DNA of 63,507 nucleotides, the filler included, from Polymyxa betae A26-41 (Eukaryota; Protista; Endomyxa: Phytomyxea): NCBI GenBank assembly GCA_003693705.1. It is 7 parts of 7 records of this genome, joined end to end, with 100 filler letters (N's around TTAATTAATTAA, not from the genome) between each part and the next. Parts side by side here need not be neighbours in the genome. Positions count along the whole stretch, not along the records: positions 49,463 to 54,794 come from RBZT01000224.1; 6 more parts are not named here. One strand, 5' to 3'. Position numbers and translations under genes: made by a program. Below the pieces are notes generated by a model, which worked only from the letters and a program-made list of their open reading frames with translations, searched no databases and was not told the DNA's origin. Within the stretch, counting starts at the first letter, position 1. Each line of letters opens with the position of its first letter. Positions 4,525 through 55,063 of this stretch are shown one piece after another.

Positions 4525-5332
4525 ATGGAGTCGCTGCCGGATTCGATAGCATTGGAAATTAACACAGGGGCTATTGTAGTGAAGCCAGATGGCGAGCAGC
4601 CGAAGCGAGGCCGCGGGCGCCCTGCTAAAAAGGCGAAAAAAGACATCCCAAACGCTGAAAAAGCAGATTGGTCTACGAAAATGATCGAAACATTGCTGAA
4701 TGAGAGAAGTGAACTCATAGACCTGTTTCTTGAAGCTCAAAAGAGCAAAAAATTGCTGCAGGGTGGACGAAAGTTACTCTTGCAGTCAATACAGACTTTG
4801 ATCTCAAGCTGAGCGTGGATCAGGTGAATAACAAATACAACAACCTGAAGGCAAGTAATCGACAAATAGTAGAAGCCAAGACCGAAACCGGCAATGTTAA
4901 ACAGCCCAAAAAGCCAGAGCACTGGGAAGCTATGTTTGAAGATCCTTTCAACCGGCGAGCTGGTCTAGCCCATGGCGACGTTCTCAAACCTACCGTTTCC
5001 ACTGAAAAGCAGGATATCGCGTCTGAAGTAAAAGGGTCGAAAGAAAGCGGCAGTAGATCGTTTTGGTGCGGTTGCTGCTGTTGGAGCCGATATCAAAGAG
5101 GGTCTGCTGGGCCTTGGCAATATGGTCTGATAAGCGATTGGCAGCAAATCACAGCTTGGGGGTGATGGCGAAGTCCTTACCGCTTTAAAACAGCAGACCT
5201 CTTCACTTCAGCGAGCAAACGATTGGCTCAAATATAATCAAGAGCAAGCGGATAAATTTTTACAACCAAAGCCTCGTCGATTCACAGAACGCCTTGCTGC
5301 AAGCAATAACCAAGTTCTTAGAGAAAGAATGA
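4525..5332 (+). pseudogene. Harbinger accessory Myb/SANT-like DNA-binding protein, frameshifted
   Basis: AT-hook-like KRGRGRP, then WSTKMIETLL...VNNKYNNLK...TGN...PEHW; split over several frames; convergent with the transposase. Confidence 0.7.
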
Positions 5333-5342
5333 TAAGCAATAA

Positions 5343-6900
5343 TTACCGCCGTATATTGAACAGGTATTGCTTAATGGCCTCTCGGGTGTTTTGTCCCTTT
5401 TGGTCCGAGTTGTCCTGTGCTGTGTTTTCATCGCAATGAATAGGTAAATGGACTTCTTCGTACATTGCTGTTATTTCTTGTTCATTGAGGTGACAGAGAA
5501 TGCTGTGTAGTATCAAACATGCCTGTACAACTCTTGCCATTTGCGTCGTAGCTGGAAACCCATTGAATGGATCAGGTTTCTGATTGAATGGAGTCTTCAG
5601 AATTCGAAAGCGATGTTTTTGCATTCCAATCAATTTTTCCACTGTAATACGAGTTCGAGAATGTAGATAATTGAATAAGGATTCATCTGCAGTGTCATGC
5701 TCTACGTGCATGGACACGAAGCCCTTGGAACCCTCCAACCGGCGCGGCCGCAGTTGCGCACCCGCTCGCACCCCTCGCATTACGATCAACGCCTTCCTCA
5801 TCGTCTTCACCTCCTACCTCCTCTCTCTCCCTCTTTCCCTCGACATCGTCTCCGTCCTCCGGACCTCCTCCTAGTTCTCATCCCGCTCACGCCATCGCCT
5901 GGCCCCAATCCAGCGCCCCGGTCCAGTCCCGCGTCCCCGTTTCTCCTATTTCCGACCCAACGTCTCCGTCCCTTCTGCTCCCGCTCCGCAAGCCGTCAAC
6001 TATACTCGTCCCGACTACTCGCCCCGACGTCACCACTGCCCCGTCGCCTTACCTTCCTTATTTCGGTTCCATTGTTTGTTGAGTTGATAAAGCACAGTTT
6101 TCTTTAGTTAATTCGCATTAGTACTGTATCAGGACTTCTTTCCCTCGTCCTAACATGCAGATATATCGTCATGAATAGGATAGGGTGTGATAATTTTCCC
6201 AGATAATTTGTAGCCAGCGTCAGCGATCACCAGCATTCCTTTGGGAACAGTATTGTCGATGTTCTTTCCAAAGTCAGAGTAGTTGAAGACAGCCTTGTCA
6301 TTGGCCGACCCCTGGTCGAAAATCGTACGAGCGAACATTTCCTTTGGAGTCCATGAAAGATGCTACAAGTCGGAGTGCTCAATGTAGGCTAGTTAACAGA
6401 GTGAATTGTATATTAGGTGACATAGGACAGATCATGTAGGACACGAGTCCGGTGCAAGCGATCTAGTACACTGCACGGGACTGGAATGCTGCATCATGGT
6501 CAAGTGACCGTGACGCCTGCTCCAACGGTCCACGCCAATCTGCACGTTCATTGCTGGGTAAAGTTTGGGGCAGCACCATCCTTCGGAGTAATGAAGACGT
6601 TCGATTTCAAAGAGGGTGCCATCCATCGCAAGACAGGTCTTGGGAAAGCCACATATCTCTTCAAAGCTCCTGCAGAGATTTTTCCACTTCTGTAAGCCTC
6701 GGGGAAGATAAAGGAACTGGTCTTTCAATAAAGCTTCAATGACACTAATAGTTTGCCAAATAAAGCGAAGTGCTGAGGCCTTGCCCATTCCAAACATTTT
6801 GGCAGACTGTGATACGCTTCATGAGTGTGCCAGATAATGAAGAGTGACAGCAGCTCGGTCTCGAATAGAAAACGTGGCATTGTCACCTATTTTTATTGTT
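5343..6900 (-). pseudogene. PIF/Harbinger DDE transposase, disrupted by two insertions
   Basis: Motifs GFPKTCLAMDGT, NVQ..VD, GSAND, ADAGY..TPY, FNYLHSRTRITVE..G..K.RFRIL, ACLILH; interrupted at 5693-6155 and about 6337-6514. Confidence 0.9.
5693..6155 (+). mobile_element. solo LTR with 5-bp TSD
   Basis: 463 bp TGTCA...TAACA flanked by TGCAG at 5688-5692 and 6156-6160; removing it plus one TSD restores the transposase frame HDDISADESLFNYLH. Confidence 0.9.
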
Positions 6901-49462: not shown

Positions 49463-49932
49463 CCCCAGACACTTAATTAAAACGCGGATAACTTGATCAA
49501 TGTACCGAACTGCTGACGCTTTGCTCATCCCAAAACTCCAGCTGAGTCAACCACAGATCCTGAATGCGTTAAGTAATGCAGACAAACTGCGACACGATCA
49601 CGATGGAAGAACCGAGCGTTATGACCGATCACAGAATTGACTGTGTCCCAAGCGATTGTGATGTACCCGACAATTTTATCAAAAGACGACTTGTTACAAC
49701 GGAACTGATTCCGAAACCATCGTTCGTCGAACCATACGTTTGCATCGGCTATGGGAATTTGTGAGTCGCGAATCGACCATCCAACCGATGCAGGACGTCT
49801 GGACGAGCGGCCATCCCAAGAAATATCAGACACCGCCAGGACAGCCGTAGTGAGACAGCTGGTCAATGTAATTTGGACAGCAGCGCCCAAAGCGCCGATC
49901 AAAGCCGCCAATTCGTGGTCAGATAGGTTCAT
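49463..49932 (-). mobile_element. PIF/Harbinger transposase N-terminus (truncated by contig end)
   Basis: WFRNQFRCNKSSFD..RDRVAVCLHYLTHSGSV matches the transposase at 7950-9050. Confidence 0.85.
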
Positions 49933-50316
49933 GATTGGCGAAGAAATGCCGCTATTTATGAGAAATGGACCCTCTGAGGGTCCATTAAATAATAGCGCAA
50001 AAATAACGCCACGGAATTTCGGGGGTCGAAATCTGATTGGCTCGATTGAAAAATAGCGGTACCGCGTTTTTTACTTGAACCAGTCTCTAACTCAAATCCT
50101 TCGCAAATCTCTTGAGTGGCCTCTCGAATATTCGACGTAAATTTGTTGAGACCGGAAAACGGTCTCAACAAATTGACGAAAGCCGACGCAATTTAGAGGC
50201 CGCGCGCAAAGTCCGCAACTTCATGGTCGCATCATTTCTAGGGTTTTCTTTGCTAGTTTGCCATCAGCTGGAATTGTCTATCGTTCCATTATTATCATCA
50301 ACAATGTCCCAATCGA

Positions 50317-51574
50317 ATGGAGGACGTGGTCCAGCGTGAACCTCGGACATTTGAGAGTGCTGATGCTATTATTACTACATTTGATGAGTTTGCTAATTCA
50401 TTTTTACCATTTAGGGGCGTTGGACTGGCAGAGCATCTACTGCCGTTCGGGGGAAACAAATGGGCTGCTTTGGCTCATGGCTACATCCGCTATCTACCTT
50501 CAGGTTGGCAACCTCGCGGTGGTGGATCCATTGAAAGAAAACAGCAGGCTTTACGAAATATAAAAAAGCCGACAGGTTGGTAGTTTTTGGGTAAAAATTG
50601 ATCCCTAAACTGTTATAAAAAGGTGATCCTTTTTGGCAACCTCGCGATGGTGGATCGATTAAACGAAAACAGCAGGCTTTACGAAATATAAAAATGCCGA
50701 CAGGTTGGTAGTTTTTAGGTAAAAATTGATCCCTAAACTGTAATAAAAAGGTGATCCTTTTTGCCTCCTGAAGTTTCGCGTGCGAAACTGTTGTTCCGGG
50801 CAATTGCAGCACATTGTTCAATTTCCGAGCTGGACGACAGTGCTGACGTTATTAATGACAACAATGACAAGGACTCGCAGTCTCAGAGCCCAACCATAAA
50901 CGCTCTGTCAACACCTTGTTGGCGTTTAAGCAGCCTAAGACTGATTTTGGCTCTCTTAGTTTGACTGATATCGGCCTTGAGAACGAATTGCTGCCGTAAA
51001 ACGCTCCGGTAACTCCGATCGGTCCCATTTGTTCTCCTGTTTCCACTGTAGCGCCAGCGCTCCCGCTTTGTCGACGCTGCCCACGACACCTGCATCTTCA
51101 ATTCCGTCTCCAACATCATCTTCGGCGGCGCCGATCAAGATGTCCTTCAAATTGACGTCATCTTCGGATGCTCCGAAGAAGAAGCATGGATTGCCTGCCC
51201 CTACATTGACTGCGTCTTCGCGTTCTGGATGTCGCCTAACTCATTGTCCATTTGGTCTTCTTGAAGTCTCAGTCACCCATAACTCTAGGCCAATCGACAG
51301 CATGATAGATAAGCTTGCCTCTTCGGAGGATGGGAATAGTATGTTGGAATTGATGGCGATGCTTGATGAACACCAGGCAGCGCGGGACTTGGCCTATCGC
51401 CGTGAACGCGATGAAGCACAGGCTTGCTTGCACGCTGAACGAGAAGTCGCCCGCACTGAAGAGCGGAAACAGCGGGAGGAGCGTGAAGAACGGATGGCAG
51501 TTCGGGAAGCCCAGAATCAGCAAATGATGATGATGATGATGGCCAAAATCTTCGGTGTCAACAACGACAAATGA
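50317..51574 (+). pseudogene. probable Harbinger accessory (Myb-like/coiled-coil) gene, divergent from the transposase
   Basis: HLLPFGGNKW...GSIERK...KKPTG N-terminus and E/R-rich coiled coil ending QQMMMMMMAKIFG; interrupted by a duplication. Confidence 0.55.
50505..50763 (+). repeat. 128-bp tandem duplication
   Basis: ttggcaacctcgcg..tggtggatc...aaaaaggtgatcctttttg starts at 50505 and 50633. Confidence 0.92.
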
Positions 51575-51949
51575 TTCCTGTTTGAAATGACTTTGCATTC
51601 TTTCAAAAAAAGTTACAGTGCACAGATCGGATTTGGCTAATGCCTGTGCTTCTCACCCGAAAGTTGTAGAGTCGAAATATATTTCCCAGTCGCAACTAAC
51701 GTAGCTCGGGATTGCACGGTAGAGTTAAGTTCAACTGTCAGTACACTCGGGGGGCCGATCCCATTCGCCATTCGCCAGCTTGACCGATCGCTGTGATCGC
51801 ATTACTCATCGTTATCATTGCAAGGCGACATTGTGGAGATGCCCTTTCCAGATCGCCTTTTTTCATGGGCGTGATAATCTTGCCCTGAAAATCTTTAGAG
51901 ACAGGAAATGCAGAATCTGTTGCTATCCCTGATCCGTATAGTGTTCATC

Positions 51950-54430
51950 TATGGGAAAACGAGAGAGGGGAAGAGAGGGATCAATCGAAAAGTGCGGACG
52001 CACTTTCCGCCAAACGTCTCCCTGCAGATTCAAAATCAATAACAAAGAACTCATAAAAAAAGTATATTGATGAAATAGTATTATGCGGAATGGCTGCAAA
52101 CATCCTTGCTGCCTCCCAATCCTGGGCATTTCTCGCGCCCGAAGTTGGAGTGAGCGAGTCTTTCGCCCCAACGACTGACGAAAGTGTCCAGATTTCCATC
52201 AAAATGGTGATGGAAACAGTTCATGATCGGCTCTATCACCGAATAGCATGCGGTCCGCAAGCCTGGCACCATATCGTTGAAGCTGATGCCGGGCGACTTA
52301 CAGGATTCGAAAATGCGGCCGAAGACCGCCATCTTCTCCCGCGTGCCCTTGATCCTGCTTAATGATTCGCGCTCCTTTACATCAAAAGAAGCGTTCAGGC
52401 GCCGACGCTTTGGAGGAGGCCGCTCCACTGTTGGCTCATCGCGAACGGGGTCAGCACGACGAACTACAGTCTCGCGATCTTCAGCTTCAGCAACTTCGGG
52501 ATTGTCGGCTTCGGCTGCGGGCTGCCGGATCACTGGCAGTACAGAATCCGCATACTTTCGAGCCAATATGCTGTTGATCTCGTCCGCGACGTCACCGAGT
52601 CCAGCGGCCTTGATCTTATCGAACAGCTGGGCCAGATAAATGTCCGGGTCTTCACAGTCCTCGTAACGAATAATCGCATTGCCTAATGCGATTACGTTAC
52701 GGGACTGGCGGACTTGCAGAAGTCGTCTCTCAATCATACGGTCGACGAACTTTTGGGCGCATAATGAGAAGTCATTATGCTCCAAAGCATTAATCGTCAC
52801 GGCCATGGCTGGACCCGGATTATCGATGTGGAACGGGCGCCACTTATAGCTGTAACTTAATAGGCCGTCATCCCTGAAAGCCAAAATTAGCGGAAATTTA
52901 ACAAAAATAAAAAATTACTGACTTCTGACGCCGCGCCAATTCCAGAACGGACAGAGCATCCGAAAAGTATCGCCTCGCGGAATTGAGGCTCTTATGTCTC
53001 GCCGACAACATGATCTGGGGCCCTTCGCCCCATAGGGCCAGTATGTAGCCGGTTGTTTGCATCGAATGCGTCCCCCACGGACCTGGGCGGTCAATCACAG
53101 CTCTCACCGACTTCTGAAAGCTGAGCATTGATTCAGTTAGGGTTTTAGGGATTCCAGATCACATACCTAATATTAAGGGATTTGTATTTGAAAGGGCGCC
53201 CGAAACAGTCGCTGAACACGAATCCAGAATCTCTTCCCGATAGATGAATCCAGCCCAGCATATGACGGATGAGACAGAGTTCCGGGATCTCGTCATTGCG
53301 GTGGATAATCAGGTATTTGTACGAATTATCAGACTTTCCTTTGATCCGCAGTCCGATAGTTAGCAGATCTCCGGAAGTCCGATTCACCGTGGTCATGTTC
53401 GGGATAAAGTCCTCGAACTTGATGTTGATCGCCTCTCGAGACCTCAGCATCAGAACGAAGCTGCATAAGAAGATCGTCCAGAGCCGAAACCCGGACTTGA
53501 CGTTTCTGGAGAGCAGCCCCGCTCGGACCATAATCAGTTCATGCGGAAGTAGGCCGGAATCGGCCTGCGGCTGATAATCGGGCAGGTCGATCTTGGTTAC
53601 TCGCTCATAACGATTTCGGACTTTGTCCAATTCGCGCGGAGATCCGCATCGCCATAAATGACGCTCCCGATGAAAAAACACAGGGCGCGGGATCGGCCCG
53701 GTTGAAACTTTCCCAGCAGCGCGAACATGGCTCCTGATAGGGTCCGGATTGTTTTCGGGCAGAATGCAGCCGAGAAATGGCGCCCAGAAATAAGTTGCAG
53801 TTTCCCGGGTCATTCCAGGACTGGTTCGCCACAATCGGCTCCCGCGTAAAAATGTCCGTCACAGCACCGACACGACGCCGACACGACGCATTCGCCACAG
53901 AAATATGGATACTTCTGCCTTCTGGAAGAACTTTGAAATCAATAAACGCCATAATAGAATCGGCGCTCATAGACTGGCAGAACTCCGTTGGGGCCCGCTC
54001 GTTCAAAATAATAAGTGATTCGAAATCTCCGATACGCTTTAGAAACAGTTCCAGCTGACTGTAGTACGACTGATGTTGTCGTACTGAATTTTCAGCCAGA
54101 GGCCGCGTTCCCGTCAGAAGAGTGGGCTCATCAGCCATTTGCAGCTGCCAGCGATCCATAACGGCAGACAGCTGTCGCGATACAAACTGCTCTTGATCCC
54201 CGGTCAACGGCTGTATAATAACGGAGCTGGAGCGACAACGGCGAATTTCCTCCTGAAATGACGCGGGCAGCTTCCCAGGACCCCGATCGCAGGGACGTTC
54301 CGGATCGGAGCTCGGCGCAAAAACTGCGGGATTAATCTCCGCGCTCTCTCTGGTTTCTGATCTCGGCGAATTCATCCCCGGTGTTCATTAGGGTTCAACT
54401 AGGGTTCAACCTCGATTCTAGTATGGGAAA
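51950..54430 (-). mobile_element. Crypton-like tyrosine-recombinase element
   Basis: Single YR gene bracketed by a 9-bp direct repeat TATGGGAAA (51950-51958, 54422-54430); no RT or long TIRs. Confidence 0.75.
52081..54375 (-). CDS. tyrosine recombinase, 3 exons, one frameshift
   Basis: LMLRSREA (box I Arg), KGKSD (Lys), THSMQTTGY (HxxR position), ARHKSLNSARRY (His and Tyr); GT-AG introns 53121-53166 and 52874-52922 join the ORFs in frame; 1-nt slip at the A6 run near 53673-53678. Confidence 0.88.
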
Positions 54431-55063
54431 GATTCGTCTCTATTACTATAGAACGGATATAATGTATAATATACACTATTACGGAGTTCGCAATTTTTTA
54501 ACCCAAATCGTTAAAGTGTATATTATATGTTGGTATTGCGTCCAATCCCGAGAGCATAATAGACGTCTATACGCGGGGAGGAGAAAAGGCTCACACGACA
54601 GACAATCTCGCTGCCACCGCGAGCCAACACTCGACTAGTATCTGTACACCTTCCAGCAGTGTGGCGCCTCCACAACAACCCAAGTCGCTCGAGAACCCCG
54701 ACGCGCAGAATTACTATACTGTGAAACCAGTGGGTGATGGCCTACAGCCACGGTGGATGAAAACTCCGCCGCGGAGTTTACCAAGGTATGAGAGNNNNNN
54801 NNNNNNNNNNNNNNNNNNNNNNNNNNNNNNNNNNNNNNTTAATTAATTAANNNNNNNNNNNNNNNNNNNNNNNNNNNNNNNNNNNNNNNNNNNNTGTTGC
54901 AGTAAAGAGTGACATCAACAACTGACTGCAGGTCTCAGGAGCGACGGGCGAAGGCTGCGCTTTCCTAAGCAAAGGGCCGATTATGTAAACGAAATATTTA
55001 TATCAAATGGGCATATTAATTTAATGAGCTATTTACACAACTTGATAAAATTAAGTTAACCAT

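What the first reader, a model, noticed from the sequence alone, without database searches (positions are those of the whole stretch)
51950..54430. Apparently complete Crypton-like tyrosine-recombinase transposon with TATGG ends and att-like junctions
Seen: three separate ORFs join into one roughly 730-aa protein through two canonical short introns and a 1-nt homopolymer slip. It carries the YR catalytic order R..K..HxxR-position..H..Y, a CxxC...C..H cluster before the core, and a C-terminal PIMNCFHHH...RWG...HSNF...C region I cannot name. The gene is tightly bracketed by TATGGGAAA direct repeats. Joining the inner ends gives CTCGATTCT-AGTATGG-GAAAACGAG, an imperfect inverted repeat around the core. 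Joining the outer flanks gives an imperfect ATCCG..TATAGT / ACTATA..CGGAT palindrome, as expected for a continuous empty site. Knowledge: Cryptons are intron-containing, YR-only eukaryotic DNA transposons with short terminal direct repeats; from memory, TATGG ends are reported for stramenopile CryptonS. Inference: a site-specific excise-and-circularise element, possibly in a lineage where such elements are undescribed.
Basis: partly seen in the sequence, partly recalled or inferred. Interest (0 to 1): 0.82.

Follow-up and report, generated by a model that had tools for sequence, protein, structure and literature searches.

The report
Defective CryptonS-type tyrosine-recombinase transposon copy
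This is a 2.5-kb mobile element of the already described CryptonS kind: its recombinase gene is full-length but disabled by a one-base slip and a lost catalytic arginine, and it sits inside another repeat, so it is a well-preserved but ordinary transposon copy.

Summary
A minus-strand gene (54375..52081) gives about 732 aa through two short GT..AG introns and one extra T in a T-run. TATGGGAAA occurs exactly twice, 46 nt upstream of the ATG and 122 nt past the stop.

All four coding pieces align in order to one large eukaryotic protein family (640 clusters). A full-length member folds like Cre (Z 16-17), and the window's own exon-2 piece matches XerH/Cre. Named relatives come from Saprolegnia, Aphanomyces, Plasmodiophora and Spongospora. 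Some relatives sit next to a C48 peptidase gene. Kojima and Jurka (2011) describe CryptonS with the same traits, TATGG termini included.

So this is a new member of a known kind. It is not an intact copy: besides the frameshift, the catalytic Arg-II and the next Lys read Gln-Thr, while sister copies in the same organism read Arg-Lys and lack the extra T.

The "att-like" inverted repeats are no better than chance. The proposed empty site is not supported. Other copies of the flanking high-copy repeat are continuous, which puts the inserted DNA at 51938..54456, 12 and 26 nt beyond the TATGGGAAA repeats. This discrepancy is unresolved. The host organism could not be identified.

The parts
51950..51958 (+). 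Left TATGGGAAA direct repeat. It lies 122 nt past the stop codon and reads TTTCCCATA in gene orientation.
   Evidence: One search finds exactly two matches. One search gives the chance estimates. TATGG is the published CryptonS terminal repeat.
54422..54430 (+). Right TATGGGAAA direct repeat, 46 nt upstream of the ATG.
   Evidence: L003, a relative with 49% aa identity, also has CCCATA 33 nt upstream of its ATG.
53167..54375 (-). Exon 1. It holds the N-terminal Cre-like DNA-binding domain, the CxxC..C..H cluster, and the first half of the catalytic domain with Arg-I (53442-44) and Lys (53334-36). It is read in two frames because of one extra T.
   Evidence: (profile positions 20-191 and 197-347).
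53673..53678 (-). T6 run carrying one extra T, which causes the frameshift. Other copies and relatives have T5 and read ..CVFH.. in frame.
   Evidence: table 4 ('53673 left out 1' in X1, X2 and X9). (P0001)..
53121..53166 (-). Intron 1, 46 nt, GTATGT..CAG, phase 2.
   Evidence: table 5: a contig of X9 joins 53120 to 53167; an intron at the same place in L001.
52923..53120 (-). Exon 3. It holds the second half of the catalytic domain: His 53066-68, His 52994-96 and Tyr 52967-69.
   Evidence: profile positions 371-436, E 6e-21..
53057..53059 (-). CAA (Gln) at the family's near-invariant Arg-II position. The next codon, ACA (Thr, 53054-56), replaces the conserved Lys.
   Evidence: R390 is conserved in at least 90% of the family. 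GtHilRKT aligned to GTHSMQTT. table 3: 53058 T>C gives CGA (Arg), and 53054/53055 give AAG (Lys), in the other copies of X1, X2 and X9.
52874..52922 (-). Intron 2, 49 nt, GTCAGT..TTTCAG, phase 2.
   Evidence: same position in L001, GTAAGG..TTTCAG.
52081..52873 (-). Exon 4. It encodes the family-specific C-terminal region with the C..H..C motifs, and it includes the stop at 52081-83.
   Evidence: profile positions 447-674, E 2e-28. (no GCR1_C or any other Pfam hit). (the same motif downstream of the Aphanomyces gene model).
54389..54410 (+). Tandem pair of the 11-mer TAGGGTTCAAC in the 5' untranslated region, next to the right repeat. It may be a protein-binding site; this is inference only.
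51927..51940 (+). First 11-14 nt of the high-copy repeat R (CCCTGATCCGTATA), cut off from the rest of R by the insertion.
   Evidence: table 7: loose ends before 54457 in 4 contigs of X1, 3 of X2 and 1 of X9 end in CCCTGATCCGT.
51938..51949 (+). 12 nt between the end of R and the left TATGGGAAA. Its origin is unexplained.
54431..54456 (+). 26 nt between the right TATGGGAAA and the rest of R. Its origin is unexplained.
54457..54794 (+). Remainder of repeat R. Depth is about 25-30 times single-copy, and it is nearly identical in organisms A, B and C. It runs to the edge of the piece.
   Evidence: tables 2 and 8.

Best explanation
The stretch is one copy of a CryptonS-type DNA transposon.

What it is: it is a single-gene element. 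Its roughly 732-aa protein has a Cre-like two-domain tyrosine recombinase core, a zinc-type CxxC..C..H cluster, and a C-terminal region specific to the family.

How it works (inference): by analogy with the Goodwin model, and with the active Chlamydomonas Crypton reported in PMC9977147, the recombinase would join the two directly repeated TATGG cores. That would release a circle carrying one core. The circle would re-insert at a TATGG-like target.

What is shown here:
- the gene model and its two introns;
- membership of the protein family and the fold;
- the repeats;
- that this DNA is an insertion into a young copy of another repeat, R;
- that the organism holds about 2-4 related copies.

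State of this copy: it cannot make an active enzyme. It has an extra T in a T-run, and Gln-Thr replaces the conserved Arg-Lys of the HxxRK motif. At most it could be moved in trans by a sister copy that keeps these features.

Inserted DNA: it extends 12 and 26 nt beyond the TATGG repeats. I take it that the element arrived with short pieces of a former flank. The true ends may instead be the junctions with R.
For: Gene model. Intron 1 is skipped exactly by a contig of X9. Both introns are conserved in L001.

Family: a profile search of 1.84 billion representative proteins found 640 clusters, many of 650-800 aa. The four pieces align in order to the family profile, with E-values from 2e-48 to 6e-21. 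Invariant family residues are CxxC, C..H, R, GK, HxxR, RH and Y.

Fold: the model of P0045 (pLDDT 85) matches Cre/Tre at Z 16-17 over about 290 residues. The model of the window's own exon-2 piece (pLDDT 86) matches XerH, Cre, XerD and Ndc10. Pfam NDC10_II scores 28 bits on P0045.

CryptonS traits:
- TATGG termini, a conserved C-terminus, no GCR1_C, and a C48 peptidase in some members are all stated in PMC3212892.
- The window has TATGG repeats.
- It has no Pfam hit of any kind.
- Contigs carrying relative P0037 have a Peptidase_C48 gene next door.
- Named relatives include Saprolegnia parasitica and Aphanomyces stellatus.

Multicopy and inserted: depth over the element body is 2-4 times single-copy, and R is continuous elsewhere.

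Defects: tables 3 and 4.
Against: - The R junctions do not coincide with the TATGG repeats, being 12 and 26 nt off. Continuous R has no TATGG at that point.
- In gene orientation the repeat reads CCATA. I could not check whether Repbase CryptonS elements carry TATGG in the same orientation relative to the gene.
- Sister copies in the same organism lose likeness (80% or more) left of about 52057 and right of about 54270. So no second copy confirms the termini.
- Two Aphanomyces copies share a left boundary at ..ATGTATTC.., which is not TATGG.
- L020 has no CCATA pair around its gene.
- No circle junction was seen, but only contigs were available.
- No Repbase CryptonS sequence was available for a direct comparison.
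Confidence: 0.75

Rival explanations
1. The mobile unit is the whole 2,519-bp insert bounded by repeat R (51938..54456). Its ends carry an imperfect short repeat, CGTATA on the left and CGGATA on the right (or only the 3-nt ATA). On this reading the TATGGGAAA pair is subterminal: either binding sites or a relic.
For: table 7: eight contigs of other R copies read ..CCCTGATCCGT|ATATAATG... The window's R copy differs from the others at only 1-2 of about 340 positions (table 3). A private 47-nt variant of R as the target is therefore unlikely. Imperfect terminal repeats are listed for several Cryptons.
Against: The extra CG match at the junction is worth only about 1 in 16 by my own estimate. The TATGG identity with published CryptonS termini, extended to 9 nt, would then be a coincidence of about 1 in 1,000 (my own estimate). 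CCCATA also lies a similar distance upstream of the ATG in L003.
Confidence: 0.18
2. The recombinase gene is a domesticated or otherwise immobile host gene. The flanking TATGGGAAA repeat is chance.
For: A 9-nt bracketing repeat alone arises in 11% of shuffles, and such repeats are seen in loci of relatives. No second copy shares the termini.
Against: The DNA is an insertion into a young, high-copy repeat. Depth shows 2-4 copies with different flanks. This copy carries a frameshift and has lost a catalytic residue, which is not what a conserved host gene looks like. The family shows up as short stand-alone contigs in many samples and next to C48 peptidase genes, like described Cryptons.
Confidence: 0.04
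3. The gene is the recombinase module of a larger element. That could be a DIRS/Ngaro-type retrotransposon or a composite with the neighbouring transposon remnants.
For: The piece is a nest of repeats. Some relatives travel with three further genes.
Against: No reverse transcriptase, RNase H or DDE domain was found in the 5.3-kb piece. R is continuous in other copies, so only the 2.5-kb unit was inserted. The full-length family proteins have no such domains.
Confidence: 0.03

Closest known systems
CryptonS elements of oomycetes and a diatom (Kojima and Jurka 2011, PMC3212892)
   Same: Both are elements whose only gene is a tyrosine recombinase. Both have TATGG terminal direct repeats, a conserved C-terminal region without GCR1_C, and a similar size (2,481 bp here; 2,541 bp for CryptonS-1_ALai). 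In both, some relatives carry a C48 peptidase gene. The nearest named proteins include Saprolegnia and Aphanomyces.
   Different: The repeat is 9 nt (TATGGGAAA), not 5-6 nt. It reads CCATA in gene orientation, and the orientation in Repbase was not checked. The gene has two short introns. The window belongs to a well-supported clade of eight otherwise unnamed environmental sequences. The host is unknown. This copy is catalytically dead.
CryptonF-1_cRei, the active Crypton of Chlamydomonas (PMC9977147)
   Same: It is the mechanistic model: the terminal motif (CACCG) recombines with a near-identical target (CAYCG), and clean excisions leave only the target.
   Different: It belongs to another Crypton group (F) and has another motif. 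Activity was observed there and not here.
Cre, XerH and lambda Int tyrosine recombinases
   Same: They share the two-domain fold (Z 16-17 to Cre/Tre for a family member) and the R..K..HxxR..H..Y active-site layout.
   Different: Identity is only 12-15%. The family adds a zinc-type cluster and a C-terminal region of about 250 aa. It is eukaryotic and has introns.
Ndc10/Cbf2 (Pfam NDC10_II), a Crypton-derived kinetochore protein
   Same: There are weak Pfam and fold matches.
   Different: Ndc10 is a domesticated, non-catalytic host protein linked to CryptonF.

Membership tests
CryptonS (member by descent) | The only gene is a tyrosine recombinase with a Cre-like fold; no RT, RNase H or DDE gene is present. 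| tested here: met
CryptonS (member by descent) | A C-terminal region conserved within the group, and no GCR1_C domain. | tested here: met
   Exon 4 aligns to profile positions 447-674. There is no Pfam hit. The same C..H..CC motif lies downstream of the Aphanomyces gene model. Oomycete relatives lack GCR1_C.
CryptonS (member by descent) | Terminal direct repeats of 5-6 bp, TATGG in most members. | tested here: met
   TATGGGAAA lies at both ends and fits the published list. Caveats: the junctions with repeat R lie 12 and 26 nt further out, and the orientation relative to the gene was not compared with Repbase.
CryptonS (member by descent) | The recombinase clusters with reference CryptonS recombinases in a phylogeny. 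| not testable with these tools
   No Repbase sequences were available. Indirect evidence: within a weakly supported group of 22 sequences, the nearest named relatives are Saprolegnia parasitica SPRG_16639 and Plasmodiophora proteins.
CryptonS (member by descent) | The host is a stramenopile (oomycete or diatom). | not testable with these tools
   Organisms are coded. The closest relatives are metagenomic only.
Autonomous, active Crypton copy | An open reading frame with the complete catalytic R-K-H-R-H-Y set. | tested here: not met
   An extra T at 53673-78 shifts the frame. Gln stands at Arg-II (53057-59). Sister copies keep both features.
CryptonF | A GCR1_C DNA-binding domain at the C-terminus. 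| tested here: not met
   Pfam scan of exon 4 at E up to 1 gave no hit.
CryptonA / CryptonI | A DUF3504-type recombinase, no C-terminal domain and no terminal repeats. | tested here: not met
   No DUF3504 hit. A conserved C-terminal region of about 260 aa and terminal repeats are present.
DIRS / Ngaro retrotransposons | Reverse transcriptase and RNase H genes together with the recombinase. | tested here: not met
   None found in the piece or in the relatives' proteins.
Starship captains | A DUF3435-type recombinase at the end of a large cargo element. | tested here: not met
   No such Pfam hit. The insert is only 2.5 kb.

The most novel reading that the evidence does not exclude
The window and its seven unnamed environmental relatives form a separate, intron-bearing CryptonS lineage. 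It would live in a host outside the oomycetes and diatoms where CryptonS was described; the nearest named relatives include plasmodiophorids (Rhizaria). On this reading the copy also carries 38 nt of its previous integration site into a new locus. That would be a natural record of aberrant excision or capture by a eukaryotic tyrosine-recombinase transposon.
Probability: 0.25. Interest if true: 0.45.

Novelty: new member of a known kind. Interest (0 to 1): 0.3.

Why it matters
Cryptons are among the least studied eukaryotic transposons, and their ends are hard to define. This case adds four things:
- a cleanly modelled gene with two confirmed introns;
- evidence that the CryptonS-type protein family is far larger than the 2011 survey showed (640 clusters at 50% identity, mostly environmental, and also in plasmodiophorids);
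- a nested insertion whose borders can be read against many intact copies of the target repeat;
- a mismatch between those borders and the TATGG repeats. If the mismatch reflects aberrant excision, it bears on how these elements move.

None of this changes the picture of what Cryptons are.

Tried and rejected
- Pfam on the four coding pieces gave no hits.
- A sequence search of the exon-2 ORF against PDB found nothing.
- The word-index protein search found only two unnamed relatives. With a 40-sequence profile it found 12 unnamed ones, so it gave no taxonomy.
- The ESM Atlas search on exon 4 gave no usable hit.
- The metagenome locus scan returned one false positive, a bacterial ABC-transporter contig.
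- Two scans of viral contigs found nothing.
- Rfam and tRNA scans of the piece found nothing.
- Exact look-ups of two window ORFs, meant to find the source record, found nothing on record.
- I tried to define the termini from relatives. The P0153 and P0037 contigs are the same locus in many samples, so they show no boundaries. L020 has no CCATA pair. The Aphanomyces pair gives a left boundary that is not TATGG, and neither contig reaches the right end.
- I tested whether the 12 and 26 nt filler sequences derive from repeat R and rejected it. 40-47% of shuffles score as high.
- I considered programmed frameshifting at the T-run and rejected it. Sister copies and relatives simply have one T fewer and are in frame.
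Each piece was used separately by reference.

Full report
**Observation**

The piece 49463-54794 carries a minus-strand gene in four ORF pieces. The model is as follows.
- The ATG is at 54375.
- Reading runs in one frame to a T6 run (plus-strand A6 at 53673-53678), then in the next frame to 53167.
- Intron 1 is 53121-53166 (46 nt, GTATGT..CAG).
- Exon 3 is 52923-53120.
- Intron 2 is 52874-52922 (49 nt, GTCAGT..TTTCAG).
- Exon 4 runs to the stop at 52081-83.
- The total is about 732 aa.

Each piece was used by reference.

Both introns lie at the same places, with GT..AG ends, in L001, a metagenomic contig whose product is 67% identical. A contig of run X9 joins 53120 to 53167 exactly (table 5). 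The kind of that run is not on record. It therefore shows either a spliced RNA or an intron-less relative.

TATGGGAAA occurs only at 51950 and 54422.

**The frameshift and a second defect**

Other copies in runs X1, X2 and X9 lack one base at 53673 (table 4). P0001 reads ..GCVFHPERRLW.. in frame. In X1, depth of about 222 remains for the window's own version, so the extra T is real in that sample.

The family profile has GTHxxRKTGY at this point, with the Arg conserved in at least 90% of 40 diverse members. In the other copies, 53058 T>C turns CAA (Gln) into CGA (Arg). Changes at 53054/53055 turn ACA (Thr) into AAG (Lys) (table 3).

This copy is therefore structurally complete but cannot encode an active enzyme.

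**What the protein is**

Pfam finds nothing on the pieces. A profile of the exon-2 region, searched against 1.84 billion representative proteins, found 640 clusters at E of 0.001 or less. Many are 650-800 aa, with the match at residues of about 200-360.

A profile built from 40 full-length members aligns the four window pieces in order:

| Piece | Profile positions | E-value |
|---|---|---|
| ex1 (exon 1 before the frameshift) | 20-191 | 5e-39 |
| ex2 (exon 1 after the frameshift) | 197-347 | 2e-48 |
| ex3 (exon 3) | 371-436 | 6e-21 |
| ex4 (exon 4) | 447-674 | 2e-28 |

The invariant or near-invariant residues are the CxxC..C..H cluster, Arg-I, Gly-Lys, HxxR, Arg-His, Tyr and C-terminal cysteines.

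The AlphaFold model of member P0045 (pLDDT 85) matches Cre/Tre with Z 16-17 over about 290 residues, across both Cre domains. The model of the window's own exon-2 piece (pLDDT 86) matches XerH, Cre, XerD and Ndc10. P0045 also passes the Pfam NDC10_II threshold.

The refuting condition "does not model as a YR fold" is therefore not met.

**Which Crypton**

Kojima and Jurka (PMC3212892) define CryptonS by these traits:
- no GCR1_C domain;
- a conserved C-terminal region;
- 5-6 bp terminal direct repeats, mostly TATGG;
- lengths of 2.5-5.9 kb;
- a C48 peptidase gene in some members;
- hosts among oomycetes and a diatom.

The window matches the first four. Contigs carrying relative P0037 have a Peptidase_C48 gene next door.

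Named relatives, at 31-44% identity, are:
- Saprolegnia parasitica SPRG_16639;
- three Aphanomyces stellatus proteins;
- several Plasmodiophora brassicae proteins;
- one Spongospora subterranea protein.

None of those tested has GCR1_C.

In a tree of the exon-2 region, the window pairs with P0001 (support 98). It sits in a clade of eight sequences that are otherwise unnamed (support 99). That clade lies inside a weakly supported group of 22 that holds the Plasmodiophora and Saprolegnia sequences.

I could not compare the window with Repbase CryptonS sequences.

**Is it mobile DNA?**

Depth in X1 is about 226 in the unique flanks, 460-850 over the element body, and 5,000-6,800 from 54447 on. 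So there are about 2-4 related copies, and a high-copy repeat, R, starts at 54457.

Eight contigs of other R copies read ..CCCTGATCCGT immediately before 54457. Those letters are window 51927-51937. R is thus continuous elsewhere, and the window carries an insertion of 51938..54456 (2,519 bp; the junction is ambiguous by the 3 nt ATA).

This rules out a conserved host gene. The TATGGGAAA repeats lie 12 and 26 nt inside the junctions, and continuous R has no TATGG there.

The window's R copy is otherwise almost identical to the others, so a private 47-nt variant of R is unlikely. The filler sequences are not R-like.

I see three readings:
- The element came with scraps of a former flank, through aberrant excision or capture at a break.
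- The true ends are the R junctions, with an imperfect CGTATA/CGGATA repeat.
- This R copy was a private variant.

I favour the first. My reason is that a 9-nt repeat beginning with the published pentamer should arise by chance only about once in 1,000 (my estimate). In addition, L003 has CCCATA at a similar distance upstream of its ATG. This is inference.

**Limits on the termini**

Sister copies lose likeness left of about 52057 and right of about 54270, so no second copy confirms the ends.

The inner "att" inverted repeat matches at 6 of 9 positions. By my own binomial estimate, allowing for free spacing, chance gives that about once in ten. The outer palindrome is asymmetric and partly made of R's own end.

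Two Aphanomyces copies share a left boundary at ..ATGTATTC... No circle junction was seen, but only contigs could be laid.

**Mechanism**

By analogy with the Goodwin model, and with the active Chlamydomonas Crypton, the family's enzyme should recombine the two TATGG cores. In Chlamydomonas the terminal CACCG targets CAYCG, and clean excisions leave only the target (PMC9977147). That reaction would give a circle and an empty site, followed by insertion at a TATGG-like site. For this copy the enzyme would have to come from a sister copy.

**Verdict**

This is a new, defective member of a known kind. The host lineage is unknown. The mismatch at the borders is the only unexplained point.

Noticed in passing
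window 54457-54794 and 51927-51940: High-copy repeat R has about 25-30 times single-copy depth. It is 98-99% identical in organisms A, B and C. Its 5' end reads CCCTGATCCGTATATAATG.. and is preceded by TAA/TAAT/CTAT in different copies. A possible ORF start is at 54661 (MAPPQQPKSLENPD..). What kind of element R is remains unknown.
   Followed up: partly
window 50505-50760: A 128-bp tandem duplication (95% identical) lies inside a gene remnant. The product of that remnant weakly matches Pfam DUF6818 (E 3e-5, just under the cut-off) and carries a KKPTG motif. The reading frame looks broken after the duplication.
   Followed up: partly
window 49463-49932, minus strand: This multicopy ORF (3-7 times single-copy depth) is broken by a frameshift near 49525. 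From memory it resembles the N-terminus of a PIF/Harbinger transposase, but Pfam gave no supporting hit. L020, a relative's contig, has a DDE_Tnp_4 gene near its Crypton-like gene.
   Followed up: partly
window 51814-51920: A stretch of about 107 nt just left of the element is also present in organism C at 84% identity. In X1 it shows extra depth above single-copy. It may be a separate small repeat.
   Followed up: no
L003 576-613: The closest Logan relative has CCCATA 33 nt upstream of its ATG and a hairpin, ATCCGTAACAAACGGAT, just before the ATG. The same hexamers, ATCCGT and ACGGAT, sit at the two outer junctions of the window's insert.
   Followed up: no
L018 245-290 and 2815-2835: A relative on a 2.9-kb NCBI contig has short iterated ACGTCACCCA(AT) motifs on both sides of the recombinase gene. 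They may be binding sites or terminal repeats.
   Followed up: no
L012 (GCA_049240585.1) and P0026: Family members are deposited under bacterial MAG labels (Fimbriimonas sp., 'bacterium'). These are probably eukaryotic contigs that were mis-binned.
   Followed up: no
window 52190-52788 in run X3: Organism B holds a 609-nt contig that is 99.8% identical to part of exon 4. Short letters at contig ends in that run (ATATTGCGAG here, CTCGCGATAT at 49779) look like linker sequence rather than genome.
   Followed up: no
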